Source: Thecamonas trahens ATCC 50062 (Eukaryota; Protista; Apusomonadida). From it: a DNA stretch of 53,135 nucleotides. This document shows, one piece after another, positions 2,487 to 24,015 of this stretch (its first letter is position 1; each line of letters starts with the position of its first letter). Made by a program: the position numbers and the translations under genes. The stretch spans positions 271,595 through 324,729 of the forward strand of contig NW_013657637.1 of the NCBI RefSeq assembly GCF_000142905.1, in the 5' to 3' direction. The notes beneath the pieces are model-generated. The model made no database searches and was not told where the DNA came from. It worked only from the letters and a program-made list of their open reading frames with translations.

Positions 2487-2893
2487 GTGGGTGCAACTCG
2501 GTCGGGCGACCCTTTGCTAGCAGCGGTGGGAGTGGTGGGTGGTGTGTCCTAGTTGCTGTGTCTTGTGCCTTGGGGGGAGGGGGAGGGGGGGAGGTCGAGG
2601 GGAACAACAAGGTGTCAGGGCGGGGGGGGGCGGCAGGCAGGACCGACCAGAGGTGGCCAACAAGAGGACGAGCGGTTGCTCCGAGCATTACAACCAACGA
2701 AAATAATCGTCACTCATCATGTTCCGTCATGGTTCGTCGTCACGTGCCACAATCGTTGCAATCGACATCAAACACGACTCATTCCCCCCCCCAAACCTCC
2801 CAACCCCGACCCTCTGACCCCCGCACCACACCCACACCGACAGACTGCACTCTCGTCCCCCCCCCCCCCTCCCCCCTCCCCACCCCCAACTGC

Positions 2894-5800
2894 ATGTTTA
2901 CTACGCCCCACCGTACACCAATGGGTGGGCGGAGCCGTGTACCTGCTACGCCTTGGCTAGCTACACCGTCCCGTCCAACGCCTTCGGCCACCTCGCTGAC
3001 GGCAGGCATGCGAGTGGCAGGCACAGCAGCAGGAGGACGACAACCAGGACATCCGACAGAACTGGATTCAGCAGCAGCATCACTTCTGGCTAGCCCCTCC
3101 ACCCATACTACTGCTGCTGCTGCTGCTACTGCTGCTACTGCTGCTACCTTTGAGGAGCATGATGCCTCCTCTCCCCTCGCTCCCTTTGCCCATTGGCATG
3201 CCCTCGTCCCAGCTCCACTCGCTCCCAGAGAGTGGAAGTCGGCAAAGGCTGGTCTGGTGCCCAAGACCCGTGGATCTCGACATGGCTTTATTCTTGTCTT
3301 TGCTGATCTCCAGTCGTTGTCTCATGCCACTCCGTTTGCGGGTGCGACTCGGTCTCCCGAAGATTCGTTCTCTCTGGCTGCGCCGGCTCGTGCACCAGCT
3401 CTTGTGGTCAAGCTCGTGGCTCATCCGCTGGAAGAGGCCTTTGCTACCGGTGTAGTGGAGGAGGTCTTTGGTCTTACCACACCGCGTGCTCGCTGGATTT
3501 GTCTGGACTCTCAGGAAGCAGCAGAGCTGGTCGATGTCCTCGCTGAACTCGATCCAGAGCGGGCTCAGCCGTATGTGGAGGCACTCGCTCAATCGGCACC
3601 TGCTGCCATCCAGGTCCAGCGGTATGTGCCTGGCGGGCCGTCGCGCAACCTGCGGTACCTCGATCCCGACGCGTGTGCGGGTGTGTTTGGTGTGCCCGGC
3701 GAGCTCACCGCGCACGGCCGCCGGGTCCTCCAGGACATCGGCCGCATGCTCATCGCTGACCTGTTGCTCAACAACTACGGCCGCCTCCGCTGCCGTGCCG
3801 TCTGGCCGTACAACATTGGCAATGCCAAGAACGTGCTCTTTGCCGCAGACACCGGCGGTCTCGTGGCGCTCGACCAGTGCCTCAACGCTTACGACCCGCT
3901 CCGCCACGCCACCGCCCTCGACAAGTACGCTACCGCCGTCCGCGACGTCCTTGCTGCCCTCTCTGCCCCGCTTGCCGATGCGCCACCACCGCCTGTTGAC
4001 CAGATCCGCCGCTTCATCCGCCAGAACTGTCGCTACGACATTGGCCGCGAGGGCTGCCACTGCGTCCACCTCGGCATGCTTGCCGGCCTTGCTGCCGTCC
4101 GTGGTGCCACTCTTGACACGCTCCGCGATGTCTTTGCATCCGCCGCCGCCGCCACCGCCGCCGCACCGGGCACAACAGCGCACTCACCGCCAACAGGCGA
4201 CCCGCCGCAGCTCGCCTTTGTCCTCGCCATGCGCGACGTCCTCGCCGCCGCCGGTGACACTGCGCAGGTCCACGCCGAGCTTGCCGAGCTCGCCTCTGCG
4301 CCAGCACTCCGTCGGCCTGACTTTGACGCCTCGCTGGCTGCCGACGACGAGGTCGCCGACGAGATCTCCGAGTTCTGGAAGCTCTCCGAGAGCCTCATGG
4401 ACATGTTTTCTGGCGATGGTGGAGCCTCGTCCTCGCTCTACGCCACACCGCTCCGCGACGCGGCCCGCGCCCGCGCCGCCGCCTCGTCGGCCGCCACTCC
4501 GGGCACACCCAACCTCTCTCCCATTCCGCCGCCGTCGCTCGGCTCAGACGCCGCCGCAAGCACAGACGCCTCGGCCCCGCGCTCCGCGCCGTCGCCCGAT
4601 GGCTTCTCGGCAGAGCTGGACTCGCCTTCGCGGCTTGCTCACCATCATCGCCACCACCGCCGCCGCCGCCGCAAGCACAGCTCACCGTCTGCTACGCCCG
4701 ACGAGCCATCCGACGCCTCGGCCTCAGCACCGTCGCGCCGACGCAAGCACCGTCATCATCATGGCGACGACAGCGAGCCGGCTGGGCCCGCCTCCGAATC
4801 GGACATTGCGCCGCCGTCCTCGCCGCCGCCTACGCTCGTCGCGGATGACAACGATAGCGAGGTCATGTCGCGCAAGGCCAAGGCCAAGTCGCGCAAGGCC
4901 AAGGCCAAGTCGCGGAAGGCCAAGTCGCAGAAGGCCAAGTCGAAGAAAGCTCGCGCGGTGGCAGCCGCTGCAGCAGCCTCGGGCGCTGGCGGCGAGTTGG
5001 CGCCGTCGTCGGCGGCAGCCAAGCTCCGCCCGGCCTTTTCGGACGTCAACAACATCCGGTTCCACCACGGCGACCGGACGGTACTCATGGCGAAGCTCGC
5101 GCCGCTGCCGATGTCGTCGACCTCGGCCGCGCTCCTCGCGTACGCTACCGCTGTCATCAACTATCGGCTTACTTTTCGTGAAGTCGTCCTCGCCTACAAG
5201 TGCTCGTACGTCCACAACGACGGACCGGTCCTCTCGGCAACGTTCCACAAGCCGTCGGCTGCCATAGACGCTGCACTCGAGTGCGCCGCCCGCGCCATCG
5301 CTCTCCGCGCTGGCTCCACCGTCCTCGGCTCGCTCGCGCCACCGGTCTTTGCCCTCGCCCATGGCGGCGGCCTCCTTGTCGACAAGTTTACGCTCCGCCA
5401 GTTTGGCGTCGCCGTCGACGTCGCGCTGCAGCTCTTGTTCCGTGTCGACCACCCGGTCGCGCTTGACGCTCCGCCGGCCATCCTCGCCGCCCCAGCCACC
5501 ATGCTCGCTCTTTCCAAGCGCGAGCGTGCCGCCTTTGCCAAAGCCGGCGTTTCGTTTGCGCCGCACGCCTCGGACCGCCTCGACTTTGAGGCCACGGCGG
5601 TCATCTATCCGGCCACAGATGCACTCGACGACGACATGGAGCTCTCGGCCCTTGCCCTCCTCAAGCAAGAACAGGCTGTCGGCTACGTCGAGACGCTGCA
5701 TGGAAACATGACGCCTGCCATGCGGTTCCGCAAGCTCATGGTCGCCCGCGCCGCGCCGTCGACAGCCCTCTCGCCGTCCAAGCTCAATCACATCGACGGC

Positions 5801-8800
5801 GTGCTCACCTCGGCTGCCTTTTTTGGCTTGCGCGCCATGGTCGCCCTCGGCTTTGACTGGATGACCGTCCCAGGCCTCACCTCGGCCGAGGACGTCATCT
5901 CTAAGATGCGTGCTGCCATGGCTCTTCTCCAGCCGGTTGTCCTCGCTCACGGCGGCACCTTTTACGAGGAGTTTCTCTACGAGTTTGAGTCACCGTCGGT
6001 TGCTCTCGCCGCCGCCATCGCCATCAAGCGCGAGCTCATCCACCACAACGCTTCGGCTTTTGTCCGCGAGCGTGCGCCGCTCCGCGGACTGGTCTGCTCG
6101 CATGGACCGACGCTGGCTGTCGAGGCCACAAACGTTCACTGGGGCCGACACGTCACGCTTGCCCAGCTCCTGCTCTCCTCGTTTGCTGTCACTGCCGCCA
6201 CCGTCGCCGACCCGCCGCTCATGCTCACTTCGGCCTTCCACGCCGCCCTCCTCGAGTCTTCCGACCCGAACATCGGCGCTCTCACCCTTGCGCCGGTCTC
6301 CTTCACCATCGGCGACGCCGCAGAGCGCTGCTACGCGGTCAAGGGCGACGCCGCCCTCGCGTCACCTTACAAGCAGCTCCTCGCCGCGGGTGCGGCGTCG
6401 ACACCGCCGCCGGCCTCGGCAGGCCCCCGCGCACCTGTGGCGTCGTCTGCGCTCAAGAACAAGTACACCTCGAGCCGACCGGCCGACGGCCCGCGCGTCC
6501 GCTTTGCGCTCTCGCCGCCGCCGTCGCCGCCGCTGCGCCCGCGGCTGCAGGCCTCGCCGTCGGCCGTGGCCTCCCCGCCGTCGCTTCACACTTGCGGCCC
6601 GGCCCGCGCTACCTCGCCGGTTGTGGTCAACTCGGGCGCGCTCGTCCTCGAGTCCTCGCCGGCTATGCATGTCTTCCGCGGTGGCCTCGCCGTCTTTGCC
6701 ACCTCGCTCGTTTGCCCGCTGCCAGCGAGCCCGGTCGCCGCCGCTGCGCTCACCTTTAAGCTCCAGGAGCTCTGCATGCCACTGCTGCAGTCGTTTGGCG
6801 CCCTCACCGTCCAACCGCAAGACTCGGGCGAGCTCGTTGCGCTGCTCCCAACACCCGCCGCCGCTGCCGCCGCCGCTCTCGCTGCCCACGAGCTCATTGC
6901 CGCTTTTAACCAAGATGCCGACGCCGCTGGCTCCTCGCTCTTGCTCCGCACCACTGGCTTTGCCGTCGTTACCGGCGACGGCTGCGCTCAGTCAGCTCAC
7001 CACGAGGCGCTACTTGTCTCGCCGCTCGTCGATGCTGCGCTTGCGCTCGCGTCCGCGTCTGACCTCTCATCCGCCATTCGGGTCTGCCTTGCTTCGGATG
7101 ACTTTGAGCTTGTCGATGACCTCGTCTCGCAGCCGCTTCTCGCCTCGGCGCACCTGCATCCCCTTACAGCACCGGCGGTCGGCGCCCGGCTTGCCCACCT
7201 GACCGGACGGTCCGCCCAGAGCCTCGCCCTTTACACAATCAGCGGCTCGCTCCCGTCCGAGGCCTTTGACGCCTCCGCGCTGCTCGCCGCAGGCGCGTCG
7301 GCCGAGGCCTCGTACTCGGGTCTGGACCTCGAAGCGCTGTTCCGAAGCGCAGCAGACGCGGCGCCGGCTGCCGCGGTCGTCGACTCGGTCACTGCCCACT
7401 ACGTTCGACAGCACGTGGCCATTGTTACGCTTGCCCGCCACCCGCGTCCAGACATGCCGCCAGCGGAGCAGCTCAGCACGTTCCTTGCCGTCCTCAATGA
7501 CGCCGTCGTCCCAGTCGTGGTTGACCAGTACGGCGGCGAGCGCATCTCGGCCACAGCCTTTGCCTTTGTCGACGACCTACTCTCGGCAACTTCAGCAGCG
7601 GTCCTCATTGCGTCGCAGCCTTTGCTCGCAGACGCCGGCGTCTCGGTCGTCATCTCCGACGGCGACGTGCTGGTCATTCCCTACTCTGACTCGACCGTGT
7701 TTATGGGCGAGCCGCTGCGGTCGCCGTACACTGCGCTTGCTGGAGCTAAGCGCTTGCATGCACCTCCCACCACCCGCGACCCTTCGCGAGTCACGCCACT
7801 GGTGCCGCTCCTTGTTGCCGCGCCGGTCATTGCCGCGCTCGCGCTCGTCGAGCCGTTTGCCTCGTGCTACGCGTACGCACCTGTCCGCGGCGCGCCAGAC
7901 TTCTCGTACGTGGCCTCAATCTCGCAGGACCCACGGGTGCTCGCCGGCGACGTCGTCGTCTCAGAGGACGAGGATACTCGTCACTTTGTTGGCCACGTTG
8001 CCGTCCTTGTCACCGACATGTCCGGCTTTACCCGCATCACCCGCGCCAAGGGCATTGTCCACTTTGCCTCGCTCATCCTCCGCATGCGCTCGCTCTTTAC
8101 GCCAATCTTTGAACTCTACGGCGCGCTCTCCATCAACACCGAGGCCGACAACTTTCTGGTTGTCTTCCCCTCGGCGGAAAAGGCGACTGCCGCTGCTCTC
8201 GAGGCCGCCCGCATGCTGCACCTGTACAACGCCGCTGTCGTAGCCGACCCGGCCGTCTCGGATGACTTTGTACTCAAGGTCGGCGGCTACGGCATTGCTG
8301 CAGGCCGCGGCTGCGTCCAGGACCTGATGTCAACTTCACTGTTTGGCGAGGTCTTTGATCGCGCCTTTCGCCTCGGCGAAGACGTCGCCGACGACAACAT
8401 CCTCATCGACGACACCACCGCCTCGCTGGCGGGCAAGCACCCCGCCTTTGCAGGACTTGACCTCTCCCGACTCCAGGTCGATGCCGAGACCGGCATTCGC
8501 TACACCACCATCGAGCTCGACGCTGCCGTCAGCTCTCTTGCCCGGTACCACGGCACGCTCCACATGGTCTCGTCCGAGTTTGACACCACTACGCCGCTCG
8601 GCTGGGTCTGCAACGCGGTCCTCAATGCCGCACCGGACGACGTCGCCGCCGCCGCTGCCGACGTCGGACGTCGCTACCTCGCGCCGGGTGCCATTCTCCT
8701 CATCGGCGTCGATCAGGCCAAGGTCACCGCCGCCGCCGGCATCGACGCCTCCATCCGCATGCTTCACCGCATGGTCCACGACCTCGAGCCGATCCTCATC

Positions 8801-11800
8801 GACGAGCTCGGCGGCTCGCTGGTTGAGGAGAAGATCTTCCTTTTCCGCTCGCCTGCCGCCGCCATCCGCGGCGCCGTCCTCGCACGTGCTCTCCTCAACG
8901 CAACCAACGCGTCAGCCGTCGCCACAGGCCTCCCGGCTGTGCCATGGACCGGCATTGCCGTTCACATCGGCGACATGCTCGTTGTTCCCGGCTCCAACAT
9001 CCACTGGGGCGACCCGCTCAACACAGCGTCCAAGCTCGCCGAGGACGTCGCGTCGGGCCAGGAGATCTTTGTCACCCGCGAGGCCTTTGACGCCGCTTGC
9101 GCCGAGAGCCCTGACCTCGCGCGCCTTCCGACCACGTCGCGGACGTTCCATGTCTCCAAGGTCGACCTGCCGTGCCTCGAGGTCGGCAACGGCGAGTGCA
9201 TTACCGCCGGTCGCGTCTTGGGAAGCGCGGCGGTGGGCGAGCACCGCGAGTCGCAGGTGAGGAGCGGCGAGGTGACCGCCGCCAGCGACGCTGCCGCCCG
9301 CGCCGCCTTTCTCCCACCGCCGCAGCCGGCCACCATCTCCCTGCACGACTCGATCGAGTTTACATCCGAGACCACACTGCTGGTCTCGGACATGTCGGGC
9401 TTTTCGCGAATCACCCGCAAGATGGGCATTATTCACTTTGCTTCGCTCATTTTGCGGATGCGGACACTGGCAAAGGGCGTGTACGAGCGATACGGTGTGC
9501 TTGAGTTCTTCACCGAGGCTGACAACACCTTTGGCCTTTTTGCCACACCGGCCGCTGCTGCCGCTGCCGCCTTTGAACTCAAGGCTGTTCTCGACGCGTA
9601 CAACGCCGAGGTGGCACCGGCAGCCGACTTTCGTATCAAGGTCGGTGGGTACGGCATGCACTGCGGGCCTGGCGTTGTCAAGGACACTGCCACGGGCAAG
9701 TTCTTCGGTACCGTCGCCGACGGCGCTTTTGTGCTCGGCGAAGACGTGTCCGAGGACGCTGCGCTCTACGTTTCGACACCGGTTCTCAGCGCGCTGGCGA
9801 CCGACGAGCGGTTCGCGCGTATGGACGTGGTGTCGTTCACGGCCGAAGACTCGCCAGACGCTCCGTTTGACTACCACGTTCTCGCATGCCCCGGTCTCAA
9901 TGGTACACTGCCAGCTGCGCAGCTTCTGACCAAGTTGATGGCGCCGGCGGCGTGGGCGCCAGCCGACAACACTACGGCCGAATCCCGATTCCTTGCGGCG
10001 GTCCTCGTCGACCGCCTCGCAGCCGGCACTACCGTCTCTGCGCTCGACGCCAAGCTGGCCGATGAGTTTATGGTCTCCGTCGCTGCTGTCCTGCTTATTG
10101 GCATGGACTTTGCGTCTGTGTCGGCCAGCTCGGGCGTGCCGGCCACGCTCGCGCTCGTCCACTCGCTCTCGGGCCTTTTGGCGACGGTTGCAAAGCGGTA
10201 CGGCGGCACGCCGCTGGAAGAGTTCATTTTCCTCTTTCCGGACGTCGACGCGGGCTATGCCGCTGGTCTCGCCATCCGGGCCGCACTTGTCGAGTACTCA
10301 ATGGCGCATCCAAATGCACCTGCGCCTCTCACAGGCCTTGCGCTCCACACCGGGTCGATGCTCATTGTGCCGGGCACAAACGTTCATTGGGGCGACCCGC
10401 TCAACACGGCGTCCAAGCTTGCCGAGGACTCGGCATCGTCGGCCGAGTTTCTGGTCACGCAGGCGGCGGCGAGGCTGCTGGCGTCGCGGGCCGGCGCCAC
10501 CTTTGTCGAGCGGTCGTTTGTAGTCTCCAAGGTCGAACTGCCGTGCGTGGAGGTGCTCGACGCTGTGGCGACAAGTGCGCTCGCGTCGCGTAAGGCTGTC
10601 CGAGCGCTCGGCATGGGCAAGCCGCTTCCGCAGTACGTGACGACCGACGCACACTGCAGGCACTACCACGGCGAGTACAGCGTGCTGATCTCGGACATGT
10701 CCGGCTTTACCCGGATCACGCGCAAGATGGGCATCATCCACTTTGCATCGCTGATTCTTCGCATGCGCGACATGCTCCTCGCCATCTACGGGGCGTGCGG
10801 CGCGGTCTCGACCTTTACCGAGGCCGACAACACCTTTGCAGTGTTCCGAACACCGGCCGCTGCGCTTCGCGCTGCACTCGAGGCCCAGGTTGCGCTGGCG
10901 CGGTATAACGCAACGTCTCTGCCCTCGCCGGACTTTGAGCTTCATCTTTCGGGCTTTGGCATCGACACCGGCGTCGGGCTGGTCCAGGACCTGCGGAGCG
11001 ACAAGCTGTTTGGCCCCGTCCACGACCGTGCCTTTGTCCTCGCCGAAGACACTGCCACCGGAACTGACATCCTCATCTCTGACGAGACCATGGCTGTGCT
11101 TGACGCCGACCGCGCCTTTGTCTGGCCGGCATCAATCACTGCCGAGGCCAAGGTCCTTGGTGAAGACGATTTTGCCGCGCCGTTTGGCTACTTTCATCTC
11201 CACGGGCGGCTCGCAGCAAGTGAGGTGACTCTCGGGCATTTGCCTGTCTCTGGCAGCCACACGCCGCGTGAGCCGCGGACGCCGGCATCCGAGTTCCACC
11301 ACGCGTTGCTGGTGGAGCGGCCGAGCGCACGCGGCGCGACCGAGCAGGTTGACGCGCAAGTGACAGCATCTTACATGCGGTCGCCGGTCTTCTGCCTCCT
11401 CATCGGCTTTGACTTTGCATCGGTGACGGCCACCACCGGCGTGGAGAACACCATTGCGCTCATGCACGGAGCCGAGGAGACAGTCCACGCCGCCATTGCG
11501 CCATATTCGGGCGAGGCTGTGGAGGAGTTTATCTTTGTCTTCAACTCAGCCAAGCTTGCACTCCTCGCTGGCCTTGCGGCTTCGGCCGCGCTCGACGAGT
11601 GGAATGAGCTGGCGTCGGCCGACCGCAAGCTCCCGCTGCTCGGCATGGCCATCCACGCCGGCTCAATGCTCATTGTGCCCGGGACGAACGTTCATTGGGC
11701 GACCCGCTCAACACGGCATCCAAGCTGGCTGAAGACTCGCTTGACGGCGGCGAGCTCTGTATTACCGTTCCGGTCTACGACGCCATATCGCGGCTCTCGG

Positions 11801-14800
11801 AGTTTGCCAACCTCGAATTTGAGAGCCGCGAGTATCTGGTCTCCAAGGTCACGCTCCCGTGCATGATTGTCCGGGCGCCGGATCGGAGCGGGACCCATTC
11901 GGACGCGCACTGCTTGCACTACGACGGCGCGCGCGCTGTGGTCAACGTCGATGTTGCCGGCTTCACCGCTGCCATGCGCGCTGCAGGCATCATCCACGCC
12001 GCGTACATGGTGCTGCGGATGCGGGCACTGCTTGGGCCTGTCTTTACCGCCCACGGCGCTGAACTTGTCCTCACTGAGGCCGACAATCTGGTGGCGGTCT
12101 TTGCCAGCGCCGACAACGCCGTTGCTGCCGCGTGCGAGGCCCACTACGTGATGAAGACGTACAACACATGGGCAAGCTCTGAGCTCGCCCCCACTTTGCC
12201 GTCCCGCTCTCGGGCATCGGTGTGGCATGGGGAACGGGCGTGGTCCAGGACAAGGTCACTTCGTCGCTCTACGGCGAGCCAGTTGACGAGGCTCACCATC
12301 TTGCGGACGAAGTTGCGACCGAAGCGCAAGTGCTCCTCACCAACAGTACCCGTGCTGCGCTCCGCTCATCAAGCCTGGCTTTGCGGCTGGCCCCGCTCCG
12401 CGCTTCGCGGGCCGAGCCTGCATCGATGTGGCCATTTGAGTATGTGGTTGTCGACGAGGCGACATGTTCGTCCACGCCGCGCAAGTCGCGCATGAGCAAT
12501 GTCGCCGCAAGCGCGCTCAACGAGGCCTCGACCGAGGCCGAGCTTGCAGAGCACGCCGGCGGTGCCGATGGGAGTGAGGCGAGCACGTTTATGAATCTGA
12601 TGCTGCAACTGCGCGGCGGCGCGGGCGCAGCGACCGACACTGTCGACGTGCTCGTCTCGCACAAGTTTGTGACCGAGGCGGCGGTGGTGTACGTGGCTCT
12701 CGACATGGCAGCGGTGACACGCAAGTATGGCTCTGTCAAGGCCATTGCAGTTGTCCACAACGCGGTGGCGATGGTGGCACAGGCAGTGGCCGAGCAGAGC
12801 GGCGTCTCTGTTCTCGAGCCGTTTGTGCTTGCGTTTGAGAACAAGGCGCATGGGGTCTCTGCTGCCATCGCCATTCTGCGGGCCATCGAGCGGTACAACA
12901 CAGAGTCGGTCTCGTCGGAGAACCGCATTCCGCTGCTAGCGGTCGGGTCGCCGCCGGCGAGCTGCTTGTGGTCGATGGAACCGACATCCACTGGGGCGAG
13001 GCGCTCAACACGGCGGCCAAGCTCGCGCACGTCATGGCGGCATCGCGGGAGCTGCTGGTGACCGAGGAAGTGGCCAAGGCGACGCGGAGCGACCCTGCAT
13101 TTGCTGCGCTTCGCTACGAGCCGCGCGAAGCGGTGGCCTCGGGGCTGGCCTTTAAGGCGTTTGCGGTCGAGTGGGCGTTTTTCGCGCGCGAGCTGCCGAG
13201 CTCGCCGGGCTCGCGCTCGGACGGGGTCCACTTCCGCGAGCTCTCGGGCACTCACGCGGTGGTGGTCTCGGACATGTCCGGCTTTACGCGGATTACCCGG
13301 GCCAAGGGCATTGTCCACTTTGCGTCGCTCATCTACCGCATGCGCGAGATCATCCGCGCAGCGTACGAGGCTGCGGGCGCGGTGGCGTTCCACACCGAGG
13401 CTGACAACACCTTTGGCGTATTTGAGAGCGCGGCGGCGGCGCTTGAAGGCGCGCTGCAAGCAAAGTCCGGGCTGCGGGCGTACAATGAGAGCGTGGTTGA
13501 TCCAGACCTTGCCATCGCGTTCTCTGGCTTTGGCGTCGACGTCGGCGAGGACCTCATCCGCGACACCGGCTCGCTCCGACTGTTTGGATCTGCAGCCGAG
13601 CGCGCGTTTGTGCTTGCCGAGGACACCGCCGACGGTGGGGCGGTCCTGGTCTCGGGTGCAGTTGCAGCACGTGTCCGTGGAACAGCTGCGTTCAAGCACG
13701 CCAAGTTTGTGCGGCAGACGTCAGATGAGCTCGACTTTGTGTTTTACGAGGTGATCGGCGGCGAGAGCCAAGCGACGGGCAGCTTGCCCCTCACCGGCGA
13801 GTATGCGCCGGCGCGCGAGGAGCATGTTCACGGCTCGCCGGCTGCGGTTTTCCGGACGGCCGTGCTCTCGTCGCCGCGGGCGCTGGACGTGGCTGCGTCG
13901 TTCCTCCGCCCGCACGCGGTCGTCCTCCTCGTCGGGCTCGAGTGGCGAAGTTTGACCGAGGCAGCCGGACCGCGCAAGGCTATTTTGGTGGCACACGAGG
14001 TGGCGGGCGTCGTCGCCGATGTTCTCAGCCAGCTCGGCGGGACCATGCTCGAGGAGTTTATCTATGCATTTGATTCGCCCGAGGCTGCCATTTCCGGCGC
14101 GCTCCAGCTCCGCAAGCTCTTTCGCGAGCGGACGGCCAAGCACGCCGAGGCCGAAGACGTGCCGCTCCTCGGGTTTGGCGTACACTCTGGCGAGATGCTC
14201 ATTGTGCCCGGGACCAACGTTCACTGGGGCGACCCGCTCAACACGGCGTCCAAGCTTGCTGAAGACATTGCGCGCGAGGGCCAGCTGTATGTGACGCAGC
14301 CGGTTTGGCACCGGCTCTCGGGCGAGTTCCGCCGCAGCCTGCGGGCCGGAACCGAGAGCCACACCGTGTCCAAGGTCGCGCTCCAGGTCATGCGAGTGGA
14401 CAATCCGGGACCGGTGTCTGGCGTCGCGGTGTCTGGCACTGTCCGCAGCGCACCGGCCGTGGGAGTCGTCGAAGACGCGCACACTCGACGGTACACCTCT
14501 GAGGTGGCGGTACTTGTTTCGGACATGTCGGGCATGTCGCGAACGACGGCCAAGTACGGAATCATTCACTTTGCGTACCTAATCCTCAAGATGCGCGACC
14601 TGCTCAGCGGGGTATGGGAGCACTACGGCGCCGTGTCTGTGGCGACTGAGGCCGACGACTTTATTGTGGTCTTCCCGTCGCTCGACGCGGCGCTGACCGC
14701 GGCGCTGGAGGCTTTCCACATCCTCGATGCGTACCACGCGGCGCTGCCTGCGGAGCGGCTGCAGGCCGAGCGGATCAACGTGTCCGGCTTTGGCATTGCT

Positions 14801-17800
14801 GTCGGCGATGATGTGGTGGCGGACGCAGTGACCGGGCGACTGTTTGGGTCCACATTCAACGAGGCCTTCCTCCTTGGCGAGGAGCTGACCGACGGTGGGC
14901 AGGTCCTACTGAGCACAGCTGCGGCGCGGCGGGTGATGTCGGACCCGCAATGGGCGTGCGTGGCGTGCGAGCCGCGGATGGATGTGGAGACGTCGACGAC
15001 ATTTGCGGTGGTTACTGGCAAGCTGCCTGCGTATGAGTGCAGTCTTGCGCAGATGAGCGTGCCCACCATTCCGTGGGGTGTGCACACGCCAGGCGGTGAG
15101 TTCTACACCGACATGCTTGTCAAGCGGCCGACGCTGGCCGGACGGGACCAGGCCGCGCTCGACGACGCTATCAAGGCGCGGTTCTTCTCCACCAAGTATG
15201 TGGTCATGCTCGGCTTTGACTTTTCGGCCAAGGAAGCGGCCGACTCGATTGATGCCGCGGTGGCGTCGATGCACACAGCTGTAGCCGAGACGCACCCGCG
15301 GGCTGCGGCGCATGGCGGCGTGGCGATTGAGGAGTTTATCTTTGCCTTTGACAGCGGCTCGGCGGCGTTTGCGGCGGCAAGTGACATGAAGGCGGCGCTG
15401 GTGGCGTGCGGCTTTGACGCTGTGCCATTTACTGGCATTGCGCTGCATGCCGGTGACATGCTCATTGTGCCCGAGACCAACGTCCACTGGGGCTCGCCGC
15501 TCAATACAGCGTCCAAGCTCTCCGAGGACGTGGCGAGTGCTGGTGAGTTCTTTGTCTCGCGCGTGGTCATGGACGAGCTCCGCAGGAACAGGCTGGTCCG
15601 GGATGTGGAGACTGTGGACCGTGTTTTTACCGTGTCCAAGATGGACTTTGAGTGTGTCGAGATATTGGGTACAAAGGGCGGCATTGCGAGCGCTAGCGCG
15701 AGCGAGAGCCCGGCACTGACCGCGGGCGACACCTCGATTATTTCGGTCGATTTGAACGGCAGCGACGACTTTGGCGTGAGTGCACTCGACACGAGCCAGG
15801 TCCTCGTGGTTGTGGGCATGCCATCCCTGGCACGCACGCTCCGGCGCGAGGGGCTCGAGGCACTGGCGTCGGCGGTGGTGCGGATGCAGCAACTTGTGGG
15901 CGGATGCATTGCGGCCGGTGGCGGCGAGGCATTTGGGCGCGGTGACGAGATTGTGGGCGTGTTTGACGACGCGCTGGTGGCGCTGCAGGTGGCAACCAAG
16001 ATTCACGAGGTGGTGCGCGAGTTCAACGCTGCAGCCGGCGCTGCGCGACTGTCGGCCATCGGGGTGGCGGTCGTGCCTGCAAGCACGACGCTTGTGGTCG
16101 CGTCGGTCGGCGGCGTGTACGGGCAAGACGTGGAGCTCGGGCGCGATCTTGTGCTTGAAGGCGCGGGGACCAAGACGGTGGTGGGGCGCGCGCTTGTGGC
16201 GAGCCTCTCTGAGCGGGCTTCGGGCGTCTCGTTTATTTCCGGCACGTCCGAAGGCGCGCACGTGCGCGAGTATGCGATGGTGTCTGGCGCTGTTGCCATC
16301 GACGGGCCGCTGGCGGAAGCGAGTGCAGCAAGGCTGTGCGCGAGCGTCGACGGGGCGCTGGGAGAGCTCGGCGCGGCGGCGCTGTCGGCCAACAACGGCG
16401 GCGCGCTGCGGGCGGGCTACATCGCGAGCCTGGCACTCGTTCGATTTGTCTTTGACTTTGGCGTCAAGCACGCGGATGGGCTTGCACAGCTTGCGCTCTC
16501 GATTGTGAGCGGGCTCGTACCGAGTGACGCGGTCGACTTTGGCGGACTGGTGTATGGCGTTTCGAACGTGGCGGACGGGCTCGAGTTTGCGCTCAACGTC
16601 CGCGACGCACTGGTGGAGTTTGGCGCGTCGGCGACGGGAGCGGCGACCCGCGAGCTGCCGTTTGTGGGCGGAGTGGTCAAGGCCGGGGAGGTTGTTCGCG
16701 ATGCAAGTGTGGGTGTGGTGTGGGGCGGGCCGGTGCTTGAGCTCAACCAGGCGTCGCACATGCTGCGTCCGGGTCAGGTTGTTGTCCTCTCGGCGTCGGA
16801 GGCGGATCTGGGCGACGACACACGGTTTGCCGGCCTAACGTTTGACAAGGCTGTGTTTGGCCGGTCGGTGACCGGGCTTGGGCAGCTGGCTGGTGTGCGG
16901 GTGTCGGGCGAGCGGAGTGCTCGGTCGGCGCCGGCGGTTGTGGTCGCTGGAAGCGAGAGCCTGCCACCGCGGACACCGCGTGGGCGTTCCGGCTCTGTCG
17001 ACTTTGATCTGGCTGTTCCTAGCTCGCCGAGCTTTGAGGCGCGCGGCTTCGACCTGCCGGACGTGGCCGAGGAGGCCGGCGCAAGCTCGAGCGCGAGCCT
17101 GATTGTGGTGCTTGCCGAAGTCCAGGTCAAGTCTTCGGGGAGCTCTGCGAGCGAGCTTGTGGCTGCTGGGTCGAGCGCTGTGCGATGGCGGTCTCTGGTC
17201 GATAGTGTGGCCGAAGTGCACGGCGTGACCAGCCTCAGCGTGCTGAGTGATGCGAGCGGGGTTCAGGGCCTCTGCGTCGGTGTTGTGTTTGGCAGCGATG
17301 AGAGTGCGTCTGCGCTCCAGTTTGCCGGCGAGCTTGTGGTTGTGCTGCAAGCGTTCAACGCGTCTGTTGACGACCCGGAGCTTGCGCTGCGGCTGGGAAC
17401 GGTGATGGTCCATGCTGGGCCGGGCGTGATTGTTGTGCCGGGCCTCGGCGCGGTGACCGGGCACGGGCTCGACGCCGGTTTGGCGGCGATGCGGAGACAG
17501 CCCCCGGCTGTGGCGCTTGCGGTGTCTGGCAGGCTAGCACCCAGCGGCTGCGGCTGGGCCCAGGTTGAGCGTGCGAGCGGGGTGGTGAACGGCCTGCCGG
17601 CTGGCGACGAGCTGCGCGTGGCGGTTGCAGAAGTCATCGGCAACGCATCCGGCGCCGAGGAGTCGTTCCAGGAGATGGCACTTGAGCGGTACAAGGCTGG
17701 CAAGGCGCACCGGAAGCGACTGGACCGGGTGCTTGCGCGGTTTGTGACAGCTCGTGCGGTGATTCATCTTGGGCTTTCGGTGATGGAGGGTGCGCCGGGC

Positions 17801-19324
17801 GGTGCGGCAGCGGCGCTCGAGGCCGCACACGCGGAGATGGAGGCGCTGACTGGCGCGCACGGTGGAAGTGCCAAGGCGCCGTTTACTGTGGCGTTCCACG
17901 AGACGGCCGGAGTTGGGGCAGCGCTGGCGCGGATTGTGGGCGCGCTCAACTCGGGCACGATGCTCTCGGGCGTTTCGGGCGTGTTGGTCAACGGCGTGGG
18001 CGTGGCGTTCTCGCCGATGGTCATCGACGCGGCGTCGCAGCTGTGTCTGGGGCCTGCGGCTGCGGCCGCGGCGGCCGGAGGCCGGTCGGGTAAGCTTGTT
18101 GTGTATGTTGGTGCCGAGGGCGTGACGCATGGCGTGGCGGCTGCCATGCCTGCCGAGCTTGGCCTGGAGCCCGTGGACGATGGCGAGTGCGAGTGGCGGT
18201 CGAGCGTGGTGCGGCTCGCGAGGCCGGCGGCCGGCGGCGGGAGTAGCAGCAAAGCAGCTTCTGTGCCTGGGCGCGCAAGCGGTGGCGAGTGCATTGTGTG
18301 GATCGACGTCGATGTGGGCGGCAAGGCCAGCGCCAGTGCGGGAGCGGTGACGCTTGCTGGTGCGCAGCGAGCGTTTTCTGATGCGCTGCTTGCATCTGGC
18401 GCAAGCGCGGTGACGACGGTGGGCGAAGCCGTTGTGGGCGTGCTACCTAGTGCGAGTGCAGCGCTCCGCGGCGGGTTCGAGGTCCTTCATGCCGCACGCG
18501 AGGTGACAGGCGGCGGGGCCGGCGTGCGCAAGATCGGAGTGGGCGTGGCCGGCGCCCATGGCGAGGTGCACGTAGCCGAGGGCATGGTGTTTGCACCGGG
18601 AGTGACGACGGCGGCGACGCTCGCCAAGGCTGTGCTCGGGCGAAGCGGCGAGGTGGGCGCTGAGAGCCGGGTGGCGAGCGCCGGACTCCGGGCGCATCCT
18701 GGACTCAGTGCATCGTCCAAAGTCTCGCAGTCGCGCGGTACAGCGTATGCGGTGGTTCGTGGCGAGCTCGGCTCGTATGCCGGAGTGGCTATTAGCCGGC
18801 CGGAGTCAAGCACTGTGCACGAGACGGCGTGCGTGAGCGTGGCGTTTGGCATCGACTACGGGTACGTGACTGCGCAGCTGGGCGGGCCCGTGGCGGCGGC
18901 AGCGTGCGCGCGGCGGGTGACGGCCATGATTGCCGGCGCCGCCGGTGAGGCCGGGCGAGTTGTGGGCGTCGACGCTGCGGTGTTTACAGGCCAGGTGGAG
19001 CATGTGGCGGCGATGGCAGTGGCGGCTGCGCGCAAGGTCCGCGACGGCATCCGGGCACACAACGCGCAGGCGAGCGCGGATGGCGGTGCGATCATCCCGC
19101 TGCGGTCTGTGGCGGTATTCGACGGCAACGTGGCATGGGAGCCGAGTGTGTGGGGCCCAGGGCTTCGCGACGCGCGAACGCTCGCGCACTCGTACCTGTT
19201 CGAAGGTGGGCGGGTGTTTGCGACCGAGGCCGTCAGCGCAGCAGCCGGCAGCGCTGCCCAAGCGGATGTGGACGTCGAGTATCTGGGACTGAGGGAAGTC
19301 CAGATGTGCGAAGTGGCTCGGTAA
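2894..19324 (+). CDS. Giant (~5,480 aa) protein: actin-fragmin-kinase-like domain plus ~11 tandem pairs of class III nucleotidyl cyclase domains; three apparent 1-nt assembly deletions
   Basis: ORFs 2558-11866, 11695-12495, 12222-13061 and 12968-19324 join through single-base deletions at ~11698, ~12190 and ~12946. Repeated D(M/V)(S/A)G(F/M)...TEAD(N/D) domains alternate with HWG(D/S/E)(P/A)LNTA(S/A)KL domains. The N-terminal region has DIGRMLIADLLLNNYGRL...GNAKNVLF...ALDQ. Start codon uncertain (2894 is a plausible ATG just downstream of the C-rich upstream tract). Confidence 0.85.
4868..4950 (+). repeat. Short coding tandem repeat SRKAKAK/SRKAK within the basic linker of the giant protein
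   Basis: TCGCGCAAGGCCAAGGCCAAG repeated twice, followed by shorter degenerate copies. Confidence 0.8.
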
Positions 19325-22086: not shown

Positions 22087-22620
22087 NNNNNNNNNNNNNN
22101 NNNNNNNNNNNNNNNNNNNNNNNNNNNNNNNNNNNNNNNNNNNNNNNNNNNNNNNNNNNNNNNNNNNNNNNNNNNNNNNNNNNNNNNNNNNNNNNNNNNN
22201 NNNNNNNNNNNNNNNNNNNNNNNNNNNNNNNNNNNNNNNNNNNNNNNNNNNNNNNNNNNNNNNNNNNNNNNNNNNNNNNNNNNNNNNNNNNNNNNNNNNN
22301 NNNNNNNNNNNNNNNNNNNNNNNNNNNNNNNNNNNNNNNNNNNNNNNNNNNNNNNNNNNNNNNNNNNNNNNNNNNNNNNNNNNNNNNNNNNNNNNNNNNN
22401 NNNNNNNNNNNNNNNNNNNNNNNNNNNNNNNNNNNNNNNNNNNNNNNNNNNNNNNNNNNNNNNNNNNNNNNNNNNNNNNNNNNNNNNNNNNNNNNNNNNN
22501 NNNNNNNNNNNNNNNNNNNNNNNNNNNNNNNNNNNNNNNNNNNNNNNNNNNNNNNNNNNNNNNNNNNNNNNNNNNNNNNNNNNNNNNNNNNNNNNNNNNN
22601 NNNNNNNNNNNNNNNNNNNN
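22087..22620. other. Assembly gap (534 N)
   Basis: Run of N flanked by G-rich low-complexity DNA. Confidence 1.
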
Positions 22621-22920: not shown

Positions 22921-24015
22921 TTAAGCCTCTTCCTCGGCGCCAGCACGGGTGTTGATCTTGGCGTGGAGGTGGGCATACTTCTGCTTGGAGGGCGGGAGGA
23001 AGCGATCGGCCTCAATCTCGACACGGGTGAGGAACCAGACAACACCCTCGCCGGTGCCGCCGCACTGCTGGACACGCTTGAGCTCAGCAGAGGCCTCCTC
23101 GAGCTTGTCCTCGAGCTCGCCCTGCTTGGCCTCGGCGTCGGCAACCTTGGCGGCGACCTTCTTCTTCTCCTTGCCGACCTTGCGGAGGGCAGCCTCCTGG
23201 GTGAGCTTGGCACGGCGGAGCGGGAGCGGGTCCTCGGCCTGCAGCTGGGCCAGCTCGGCGCGGGCGCGGTTGCGCTTGACCACGCCGAGCGTGTCATCGT
23301 TGGCCTTGGCCTCGGCGGTGGCAATGGCACCGTGGTACGCGTCCTCCTGCGACTTGAGGTCGTCGATGGCCGACTGCAGCTCGTCCTCGGCAGCCTGCAG
23401 CTCAGCCTCGGCAGCCTGCAGCGCGGCGACGGCGGCGCGCTGCGCGTCGAGTGCGGTCATGACCTCGTCGAAGAGCGACTGCGCCTTGGCAACCTCCTCC
23501 GAGTTGTCGCCCTGCGGTGCGTCAACCGTCTCCTGGACGCCAAACTCGTACCGGTACACCAGGTACTCAAGCAGCGCCATCTGGCCGTTTGCATCTTGGT
23601 CGATATCACGCAGCTTCTTGCGCATCTCAAGCACCGTCATGGTCTCGTCGAGAGACTCGAGGAACTGCATCCAGACCGGTGAGTAGGGTGGGGGTGATGA
23701 GGAGGGAGGGGGAGGGGGGGGGGAGGGGGAGCGGTANNNNNNNNNNNNNNNNNNNNNNNNNNNNNNNNNNNNNNNNNNNNNNNNNNNNNNNNNNNNNNNN
23801 NNNNNNNNNNNNNNNNNNNNNNNNNNNNNNNNNNNNGATCAGTCACCGTTCTGAGGAAAAGGTCGTCAAGCTTGAGAGGGGGACAGAGTGGGGATAAGGC
23901 TCACGGGGGAGAGGGGAGACGGGGAGGGGGGAGGCATACCGTTGAGGAACCAGATAGCCTGCTCAGAGTACTTGTGGGTGCAGAGCTCAGAGAACTTGTT
24001 GTTGCCGGCCGACAT
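22921..24015 (-). CDS. Calcium-regulated actin-bundling protein (Dictyostelium ABP34-like), EF-hand plus coiled coil. Exons 23940-24015 and 22921-23664; a middle exon is probably lost in the gap
   Basis: Exon 1 is MSAGNNKFSELCTHKYSEQAIWFLNG followed by GTATGC. The last exon follows CTACTCAC...GCAG and reads FLESLDETMTVLEMRKKLRDIDQDANGQMALLEYLVYRY...GVVKRNRARAELAQL...GVVWFLTR. These match the recalled ABP34 motifs QQAVHFLNA, DVNFDGRVSFLEYLLYQY and GAIWWMNR. Confidence 0.78.
23737..23836. other. Assembly gap (100 N, probably unknown size)
   Basis: Run of exactly 100 N inside the ABP34-like gene. Confidence 1.

What the first reader, a model, noticed from the sequence alone, without database searches (positions are those of the whole stretch)
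7980..15670. Catalytic residues are split between alternating A and B domains, forming built-in C1/C2-like pseudo-heterodimers
Seen: A domains keep both metal-binding Asps (DMSGF / TEADN) but mostly lack the transition-state N-x3-R/K motif (FGEVFDRAFRLGED, FGPVHDRAFVLAED, FGSAAERAFVLAED). B domains lack the DxxGF and EAD motifs (GGTPLEEFIFLF) but keep WGDPLNTASKLAED. Known: this complementary division of labour is how mammalian transmembrane AC C1/C2 and soluble GC alpha/beta build one active site. Inference: each A-B pair forms one active site plus one degenerate pocket that could be allosteric (as for forskolin), giving up to ~6 active sites per chain. This may be convergent evolution of pseudo-heterodimerism.
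Basis: partly seen in the sequence, partly recalled or inferred. Interest (0 to 1): 0.85.

Follow-up and report, generated by a model that had tools for sequence, protein, structure and literature searches.

The report
Six split-site cyclase pairs, one protein
A roughly 5,480-residue protein of the marine flagellate Thecamonas trahens strings together six pairs of cyclase-like domains, where one domain of each pair keeps the metal-binding residues and the other the transition-state residues, so each pair should fold into one complete and one dead active site, as in animal adenylyl cyclases but probably evolved separately.

Summary
Between 7979 and 15670 one + strand gene (Thecamonas trahens AMSG_08695) encodes six A-B pairs of divergent class III cyclase-homology domains.

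- **Residue split:** every A keeps both metal Asps (DMSGF or DVAGF, and TEADN/D) and none keeps Asn plus Arg/Lys together. Every B has lost both motifs but keeps Asn and a Lys in the Arg position.
- **Origin:** the split did not arise in this gene. Single A-B proteins of 400-550 aa with the same division occur in bacteria and several protist lineages. Bacterial 200-aa "solo" relatives carry all four residues in one domain.
- **Convergence:** in the best tree A, B and solo group apart from Thecamonas's own tmAC-like C1/C2. This favours convergence with animal cyclases, but an AU test does not reject the alternative.
- **Assembly errors:** three apparent frameshifts in pair 3/4 are one-base homopolymer errors of this assembly, and the public gene model hides them as mini-introns.

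Catalysis, the product nucleotide and any allosteric role of the dead pocket remain untested. The scan had noted this only on this same stretch, not on other DNA.

The parts
2894..19324 (+). Whole gene (T. trahens AMSG_08695). It is one open frame of about 5,477 codons from the ATG at 2894 once the three one-base assembly errors are allowed for. The public model has 5,293 aa.
   Evidence: ORFs and translations; 100% match to P0158, AMSG_08695; model against window.
7979..8512 (+). A1: metal-binding half (DMSGF, TEADN). D at the Asn position; the Arg is kept.
   Evidence: the only domain over Pfam PF00211's cut-off (25.5 bits).
8672..9193 (+). B1: transition-state half (HWGDPLNTASKLAED, VSK). 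Shortened beta2-beta3 hairpin.
9353..9877 (+). A2: DMSGF, TEADN; D and V at the Asn and Arg positions.
   Evidence: modelled
10058..10564 (+). B2: HWGDPLNTASKLAED, VSK.
   Evidence: modelled
10658..11197 (+). A3: DMSGF, TEADN; D and V at the Asn and Arg positions.
11366..11874 (+). B3: HW(G)DPLNTASKLAED, VSK. The first assembly frameshift cuts it at 11696-11698.
11914..12440 (+). A4: the most divergent A (DVAGF, TEADN; D and H). The second frameshift cuts it at 12188-12192.
12666..13168 (+). B4: the most divergent B (HWGEALNTAAKLAH; no VSK Lys). The third frameshift cuts it at 12945-12947.
13235..13759 (+). A5: DMSGF, TEADN; E and V at the Asn and Arg positions.
13892..14407 (+). B5: HWGDPLNTASKLAED, VSK.
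14486..15019 (+). A6: DMSGM, TEADD; N kept at the Asn position, L at the Arg position.
15173..15670 (+). B6: HWGSPLNTASKLSED, VSK.
11696..11698 (+). Assembly error 1: a G run of 3 where the five sister repeats have 4. Contigs of four other runs insert a G.
12188..12192 (+). Assembly error 2: a C run one base short. Other runs insert C (two isolate runs) or A (one metagenome).
12945..12947 (+). Assembly error 3: a G run one base short. Both isolate runs insert a G.
5066..7717 (+). Two degenerate A-B pairs upstream: A0 5066-5437, B0 5819-6163 (HWGRHVTLAQ, so Asn and Lys are lost), then 6743-7054 and 7505-7717.
15797..19270 (+). About three further degenerate A-like and B-like pairs downstream, with no catalytic motifs.

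Best explanation
Each A-B unit is an intramolecular, head-to-tail pseudo-heterodimer of two class III cyclase-homology domains.

- **Active site:** A supplies the two metal-binding Asps. B supplies the Asn, a Lys in place of the usual transition-state Arg and, in five of six units, a Lys at the gamma-phosphate position. One interface pocket is therefore complete.
- **Dead site:** the symmetry-related pocket has lost its metal, Asn/Arg and base residues.
- **The chain:** it carries six such complete sites, flanked by about five pairs that have lost everything.
- **History:** the unit is older than the gene. A solo, homodimeric cyclase type with Lys for Arg (bacteria) duplicated and fused. The two copies lost complementary residues, giving single A-B proteins in bacteria and protists. 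Whole units were then amplified in tandem in Thecamonas.
- **Likely function:** I take it to be a multi-site nucleotidyl cyclase whose substrate is not predictable from sequence.

Shown: the residue split, its conservation, the homology, and that the gene is intact. Modelled: the domain packing. Inferred: catalysis and the A(n)-B(n) pairing register.
For: - Residue split in all six pairs, mapped on solved cyclases.
- The family is large: 2,596 representatives at E<=1e-3 and 130 at E<=1e-30, mostly single A-B proteins. Split conserved in 58 outside members.
- Keeping exactly one full residue set under long divergence argues for selection on one working site.
- Solo bacterial proteins have D, D, N and K in one domain. 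Profile-profile E-values: A-solo 1e-36, B-solo 7e-27.
- All A form one group and all B another across taxa (SH-aLRT 99 and 100).
- Register: the intact block starts with A1 and ends with B6, and the flanking pairs are dead in both halves. The closest single-unit relatives are A-B. A-to-B linkers are 66-98 aa with a long helix; B-to-A linkers are 13-53 aa.
- Gene intact in other runs.
- The organism has many cNMP-binding domains and phosphodiesterases.
Against: - No biochemical data exist for any member.
- Lys replaces the transition-state Arg throughout the family.
- The base-specifying pair is not canonical and cannot be aligned unambiguously.
- Eleven of the twelve domains fall below Pfam's cyclase cut-off.
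- The two-chain docking test gave no verdict.
- AF2 knows tmAC and sAC structures and may impose that packing.
- The B(n)-A(n+1) control model could not be run.
- A structurally similar two-domain protein of P. aeruginosa (6yii) is titled by its depositors an ATP-binding, cyclase-like protein.
Confidence: 0.6

Rival explanations
1. The pairs fold as pseudo-heterodimers but are not enzymes. They bind a nucleotide or metal and act as sensors or scaffold beads, as proposed for the P. aeruginosa class III cyclase-like ATP-binding protein.
For: - Arg is replaced by Lys and the base-specifying pair is non-canonical.
- Most domains are below Pfam's cut-off.
- About five pairs in the same chain are plainly dead.
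Against: - D, D, N and K are each kept in about 90% of 58 divergent relatives, while the mirror-site positions drift.
- Solo relatives keep the full set.
- Lys is a chemically plausible stand-in for Arg (my inference).
- No sequence similarity to 6yii at E<=1.
Confidence: 0.25
2. The functional dimers are out of register or between chains. B(n) pairs with A(n+1), or A and B domains of different molecules pair, so the chain builds a zipper or polymer rather than six closed beads.
For: - A subfamily of single proteins has the order B then A, with the same complementary residues.
- The docking test of separated A2 and B2 gave no verdict.
- The register control model could not be run.
Against: - The intact block begins with A and ends with B. 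In the other register A1 and B6 would face dead partners.
- The nearest relatives are A-B.
- AF2 packs A2 with B2 confidently.
- One B-to-A linker is only 13 residues.
Confidence: 0.1
3. The gene is a decaying pseudogene, given three frameshifts in pair 3/4.
For: Three frame changes within 1.3 kb of the window.
Against: - Each is a homopolymer one base short.
- Contigs from two isolate samples and two marine metagenomes carry the missing base.
- About 16 kb otherwise stays open.
- The sister repeats have the longer G run.
Confidence: 0.02

Closest known systems
Mammalian membrane adenylyl cyclases, C1/C2 catalytic core (AC9 6r3q, AC5 8sl4, AC8 8buz)
   Different: - One pair per chain in mammals against six intact plus about five dead pairs here.
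- Lys instead of Arg.
- Short bacterial-type domains without the long beta4-beta5 arm.
- B's hairpin is shortened.
- No PDB sequence match to tmAC at E<=10 for either domain profile.
- Thecamonas's own tmAC-like C1/C2 fall on the other side of the tree.
Soluble adenylyl cyclase ADCY10 (C1-C2 in one chain)
   Different: No detectable sequence relationship. In sAC the degenerate site binds bicarbonate (from my own knowledge); no equivalent conserved residues are seen here.
Alveolate guanylate cyclases (Toxoplasma, Plasmodium) with inverted C1/C2 roles
   Same: They show that the complementary split can occur in either order (PMC6592433). This family also has both A-B and B-A members.
   Different: Those are membrane proteins fused to a P4-ATPase, with one pair only.
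P. aeruginosa class III adenylyl cyclase-like ATP-binding protein (6yii)
   Different: No sequence match. It is titled ATP-binding rather than a cyclase; I could not read the paper.
Homodimeric bacterial class III cyclases (3mr7, Ma1120) and the uncharacterised 'solo' 200-aa proteins of Microcoleus, Pyrinomonadaceae, Myxococcota and others
   Same: These are the nearest sequence relatives: 3mr7 at 2e-10 to A and 1.8e-14 to solo. Solo shares the hallmarks DMSGF, GI(I/V)HF, EADN and NxASKLGED.
   Different: They carry all catalytic residues in one domain, so they should form symmetric dimers with two sites. 3mr7 and Ma1120 have Arg, not Lys.

Membership tests
Class III nucleotidyl cyclase catalytic domain (CHD, Pfam PF00211) | [quoted passage not shown] | tested here: met
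Class III nucleotidyl cyclase catalytic domain (CHD, Pfam PF00211) | Score over Pfam's gathering cut-off (21.9 bits) | tested here: inconclusive
   Only A1 passes (25.5 bits). Pairs 2 and 5 give no hit at E<=0.1. Relatives score 19-28 bits. Profiles against PDB cyclases are significant.
Class III nucleotidyl cyclase catalytic domain (CHD, Pfam PF00211) | Two metal-binding Asps (beta1, and the beta2-beta3 turn) | tested here: met
   Present in all six A domains, and in 52/58 and 55/58 relatives. Absent as motifs from B.
Class III nucleotidyl cyclase catalytic domain (CHD, Pfam PF00211) | Transition-state Asn and Arg on helix alpha4 | tested here: not met
   Asn is present in all six B domains (52/58 relatives). 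The Arg position is Lys in all six and in 53/58 relatives, and Arg in only 3/58. Solo relatives are also Lys.
Class III nucleotidyl cyclase catalytic domain (CHD, Pfam PF00211) | Base-specifying pair (Lys/Asp for ATP; Glu/Cys or Glu/Ala for GTP) | tested here: inconclusive
   Solo relatives have Lys at D-4 and Asp two residues before the F/Y-G. In B the hairpin deletion makes the Glu either the base residue or the lost Asp, depending on the alignment. The second position is Val/Ile.
Class III nucleotidyl cyclase catalytic domain (CHD, Pfam PF00211) | Makes a 3',5'-cyclic nucleotide from an NTP | not testable with these tools
tmAC-type C1/C2 pseudo-heterodimer (class IIIa lineage) | Head-to-tail packing of two unlike CHDs of one chain, with complementary residues | tested here: met
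   Model and superposition; residue complement. This rests on a prediction, not an experiment.
tmAC-type C1/C2 pseudo-heterodimer (class IIIa lineage) | Common descent: A with C1 and B with C2 | tested here: not met
   In the best tree, A+B+solo are separated from Thecamonas tmAC-like C1/C2 and homodimeric CHDs at SH-aLRT 95. However, forcing A with C1 costs 28.6 lnL and is not rejected (p-AU 0.13).
Pycsar pyrimidine cyclase (PycC) | Match to PycC models and an adjacent cNMP-activated effector | tested here: not met
   Solo relatives and the bacterial A-B protein P0008 give only weak hits (1e-4 to 8e-7), and the Thecamonas pair gives none. Neighbours of the solo genes are not conserved.

The most novel reading that the evidence does not exclude
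AMSG_08695 is a working 'poly-cyclase' with six independent, complete catalytic sites on one soluble chain. It would belong to an undescribed clade of class III cyclases that uses Lys instead of the transition-state Arg. That clade reached the one-live-site, one-dead-site heterodimer design independently of animal adenylyl and guanylyl cyclases, and possibly has an unusual nucleotide specificity.
Probability: 0.35. Interest if true: 0.8.

Novelty: new variant of a known kind. Interest (0 to 1): 0.6.

Why it matters
The one-active-site, one-regulatory-site heterodimer is the core design of animal adenylyl and soluble guanylyl cyclases.

- **A second origin with intermediates:** here the same design appears in a separate branch of the superfamily, and all intermediate stages are still alive. 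There are solo homodimer-type proteins, fused complementary pairs in either order, and tandem arrays. This gives a natural series for asking why symmetric two-site cyclases repeatedly decay into asymmetric ones.
- **An uncharacterised family:** it has hundreds of members in bacteria and protists, and Pfam and NCBIfam barely see it.
- **An annotation error:** the public model of this gene removes part of pair 3/4, including B3's catalytic motif, because of 454-type homopolymer errors.

Tried and rejected
- **Complex prediction** on A2 and B2 as separate chains: no verdict (score 0.05, controls not run). I do not use it either way.
- **Pseudogene reading:** rejected by reads.
- **NCBIfam:** no family. 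**PADLOC:** only weak PycC similarity for the solo relatives and the bacterial A-B protein P0008, none for the Thecamonas pair.
- **Genomic neighbours of 25 non-redundant bacterial solo genes:** no conserved partner. I saw a response regulator, a GAF-SpoIIE phosphatase, inorganic pyrophosphatase in 2 of 29, and others. They give no clue to the product.
- **Adjacent A and B genes in bacteria:** I first thought some bacterial loci had separate A and B genes, from tblastn coverage 3-396. HMM scans showed a single solo domain only.
- **DUF2652 cyclase-like proteins** (PMC4886424): a different family; none of the Pfam scans (E<=0.1) listed DUF2652.
- **Literature:** searches for Thecamonas cyclases, tandem cyclase-homology domains and the 6yii paper found nothing relevant.
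- **AU test of A with C1:** not significant.
- **Rfam:** nothing in the window.
Full report
**What is there.** The finding lies inside one very long + strand reading frame (2558-11866 and 12968-19324 in the same phase; translations). A protein search identifies it as Thecamonas trahens ATCC 50062 AMSG_08695, an 'uncharacterized protein' of 5,293 aa in the public model (100% identity). Motif positions, alignments and domain HMMs show six A domains and six B domains in strict alternation between 7979 and 15670. A domains are 31-48% identical to one another, and B domains 27-48%. Pair 4 is the most divergent. A and B are homologous to each other (hhalign 97.8%, E 9e-13). At the DNA level only the motif-coding stretches are alike (60-91%), so these are old duplications and not an assembly collapse.

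**The frameshifts are assembly errors.** Between 11.7 and 13.0 kb the frame changes three times. Each change sits at a homopolymer one base shorter than expected. The five sister repeats have TGGGGC where B3 has TGGGC. I laid contigs of two isolate samples and two marine metagenomes on 11400-13300:
- a G is inserted behind 11696 in all four runs;
- a C (two runs) or an A (one run) is inserted at 12187/12188;
- a G is inserted behind 12944 in both runs that cover it.

The gene is therefore continuous, about 5,477 codons from the ATG at 2894. The public model bridges the three sites with mini-introns (11690-11724, 12193-12248, 12903-12938). The first of these deletes B3's HWGDPLNTASK motif.

**The residue split.** A profile of the A domains finds solved class III cyclases (3mr7 at 2e-10, Ma1120, Chlamydomonas sGC beta). 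A profile of the B domains finds Ma1120 (3e-3). In these alignments:
- The D of DMSGF and the D of TEADN fall on the two metal Asps.
- The A residues at the Asn and Arg positions are D/R, D/V, D/V, D/H, E/V and N/L for A1 to A6. No A has both.
- In B, NTASK falls on Asn and Arg, so Lys replaces Arg.
- The VSK Lys, present in five of six B domains, falls where the gamma-phosphate Lys/Arg lies in canonical cyclases. That last placement is my own reading of the alignment.
- B has a beta2-beta3 hairpin four residues shorter than A. This removes the EAD motif (secondary structure).

The roles of these residues, and the statement that the mammalian heterodimer has one active and one non-functional site, are taken from PMC2576301 and PMC6592433.

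One correction: B is not free of acidic residues. A D/E sits two or three residues after the first Asp position (41/58 relatives), and E-E sits at the hairpin tip (46/58 for the first Glu). Alignments disagree on whether that Glu replaces the lost Asp or the base-specifying Lys/Glu.

**Do A and B pair?** AlphaFold2 on pair 2, with the five intact pairs as its alignment, gave pLDDT 79.5 and pTM 0.81 for the 435-residue unit.
- Foldseek's best matches are chains holding both catalytic domains: the AC9 soluble core at TM 0.61-0.63, sAC at 0.52-0.56 and 6yii at 0.56. Single-domain cyclases give TM 0.33.

So A lies on C1 and B on C2 in the same rigid-body arrangement. With the residue equivalences above, this puts A's Asps and B's Asn/Lys at one interface pocket. 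The separate-chain docking test returned no verdict and is not used.

**Pairing register.** Three observations favour A(n)-B(n):
- The intact block starts with A1 and ends with B6. The pairs on either side are dead in both halves: B0 reads HWGRHVTLAQ, and the A-like domain after B6 has no DxxGF.
- The closest single-unit relatives are ordered A then B.
- A-to-B linkers are 66-98 aa with a long helix leading into B, while B-to-A linkers are 13-53 aa.

The control model of B2-A3 could not be run. A B-then-A subfamily also exists. The other register therefore keeps about 10%.

**The family.** An exhaustive profile search with the pair alignment found 2,596 representatives at E<=1e-3 and 130 at E<=1e-30.
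- By HMM architecture, 101 of the best hits are A-B, 18 are B-A and a few are arrays of up to B-A x5.
- Named sources include Rhizamoeba, a bicosoecid, the dinoflagellate Yihiella, the choanoflagellate Bicosta and a second Thecamonas protein, AMSG_03955.
- Bacterial members include P0008 on a 4.7-Mb contig and P0004 beside a PAS-GAF hybrid histidine kinase, a P450 and a ferredoxin. The protein atlas lists 401-aa bacterial clusters called 'hypothetical protein'.
- Over 58 outside full-length pairs, A keeps D 52 and D 55, while its Asn and Arg positions vary (Asn in only 6). B keeps N 52 and K 53 (R 3), while its first Asp position is mostly Gly.

The division of labour is thus a conserved family trait. 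That is hard to explain unless one complete site is under selection.

**Origin and convergence.** A scan of bacterial genomes with A-specific peptide patterns returned 80 loci in Microcoleus and other cyanobacteria, Pyrinomonadaceae, Myxococcota, Proteobacteria, Actinomycetota and Chloroflexia. Each encodes a single domain of about 200 aa, with no B domain beside it.
- These solo proteins carry DMSGF, GI(I/V)HF, EADN and FGDxVNxASKLGED together. 80 of 81 have the Lys, and the one exception is an ordinary cyclase.
- They align to 3mr7 with Lys on its Arg.
- Profile-profile E-values are A-solo 1e-36, B-solo 7e-27 and A-B 1.5e-26.
- In a tree of domains, all A form one group (SH-aLRT 99) and all B another (100), each mixing bacterial and eukaryotic members. 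This fits a single A/B split. Whole units were later amplified in Thecamonas.

I then added twelve canonical domains from the Thecamonas genome, including a tmAC-like gene with its own C1-type and C2-type halves. A+B+solo fell on one side of a branch (SH-aLRT 95) and all canonical domains on the other, with tmAC-like C1 and C2 together at 97. This favours an independent origin of the split, that is, convergence with animal cyclases. The caveat is that forcing A with C1 costs 28.6 log-likelihood units but is not rejected (p-AU 0.13), and long branches are involved.

**Function.** The organism has a large cyclic-nucleotide toolkit: at least 65 cNMP-binding matches, about 50 canonical cyclase matches and 14 class I phosphodiesterases. 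It also has several paralogous A-B genes and arrays on other contigs with the same motifs. I found no conserved gene neighbour in bacteria, no defence-system signature, and no paper on any member. Solo relatives have the ATP-type Lys and Asp at the base positions. B does not, so the substrate of the pairs is open. The dead pocket's A-side residues vary across the family. An allosteric site is therefore possible but unsupported.

**Verdict.** Catalysis is likely but unproven (about 0.6). The pseudoenzyme rival stands at 0.25. This is a new variant of a known design, in an uncharacterised branch of class III cyclases, repeated six times in one chain.

Noticed in passing
window 11690-11724, 12193-12248, 12903-12938: The public model AMSG_08695 (5,293 aa) skips these three short stretches as introns. 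They coincide with one-base homopolymer errors, and the first removes B3's HWGDPLNTASK motif. The model is about 40 residues short in pair 3/4.
   Followed up: yes
window 2913-3362: The public model also splices out a 450-nt GT-AG interval just after the start codon. The frame stays open through it, so I cannot tell whether it is a real intron.
   Followed up: partly
window 3398-3844: The N-terminal region gives a weak Pfam hit to the actin-fragmin kinase catalytic domain (E 1.2e-4, 22 bits, below the cut-off of 24), ahead of the cyclase array.
   Followed up: no
window 22087-22620 and 23737-23836: Two runs of N (534 and 100 bases). They account for the apparent GC dip to 0.44 at 22-24 kb.
   Followed up: partly
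L011-L090 (for example L024:3977-4576, L013:3914-4501): These bacterial loci encode an uncharacterised family of about 200-aa solo cyclase-like proteins with DMSGF, GI(I/V)HF, EADN and NxASKLGED in one domain, with Lys where cyclases have Arg. They are mostly at or below Pfam's PF00211 cut-off and have no conserved neighbours.
   Followed up: partly
proteins P0079, P0082, P0097, P0114, P0121, P0130, P0138, P0146: A subfamily of about 400-600-aa proteins has the reverse order. The N-terminal domain carries YGDPVNxASKL and no DxxGF; the C-terminal domain carries DMSGF and xxGDN and no Asn/Lys. This parallels the inverted C1/C2 of alveolate guanylate cyclases.
   Followed up: partly
G000:C6:302450-304900 (L095, L096) and C26:98270-102910 (L097, L098): Thecamonas also has classical tmAC-like genes with a C1-type half (both Asps; Asn and Arg lost) and a C2-type half (KIKTVG, NTASR, KGKG). 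Both kinds of split cyclase therefore coexist in one genome.
   Followed up: partly
G000 contigs C31, C36, C16, C18, C4, C9, C19, C11 (L006-L010): Paralogous A-B genes and arrays. C36 has a single intact pair. C31 has at least A-B-A-B with intact motifs. C18 has one dead and one intact pair. C16 (AMSG_03955, with a GOLD domain) has degenerate pairs.
   Followed up: partly
L093:5001-6242 and L093:1972-4818: The closest single-unit relative (P0004, 413 aa, E 2.6e-110) sits in a bacterial-looking metagenome contig directly downstream of a PAS-GAF-histidine kinase-receiver gene. This hints at transfer between bacteria and protists.
   Followed up: no
L094:88-6450 (P0002): A marine metagenome contig encodes a 2,120-aa array of five B-A units that is only 31% identical to this gene. 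Long arrays therefore exist in at least one other organism.
   Followed up: no
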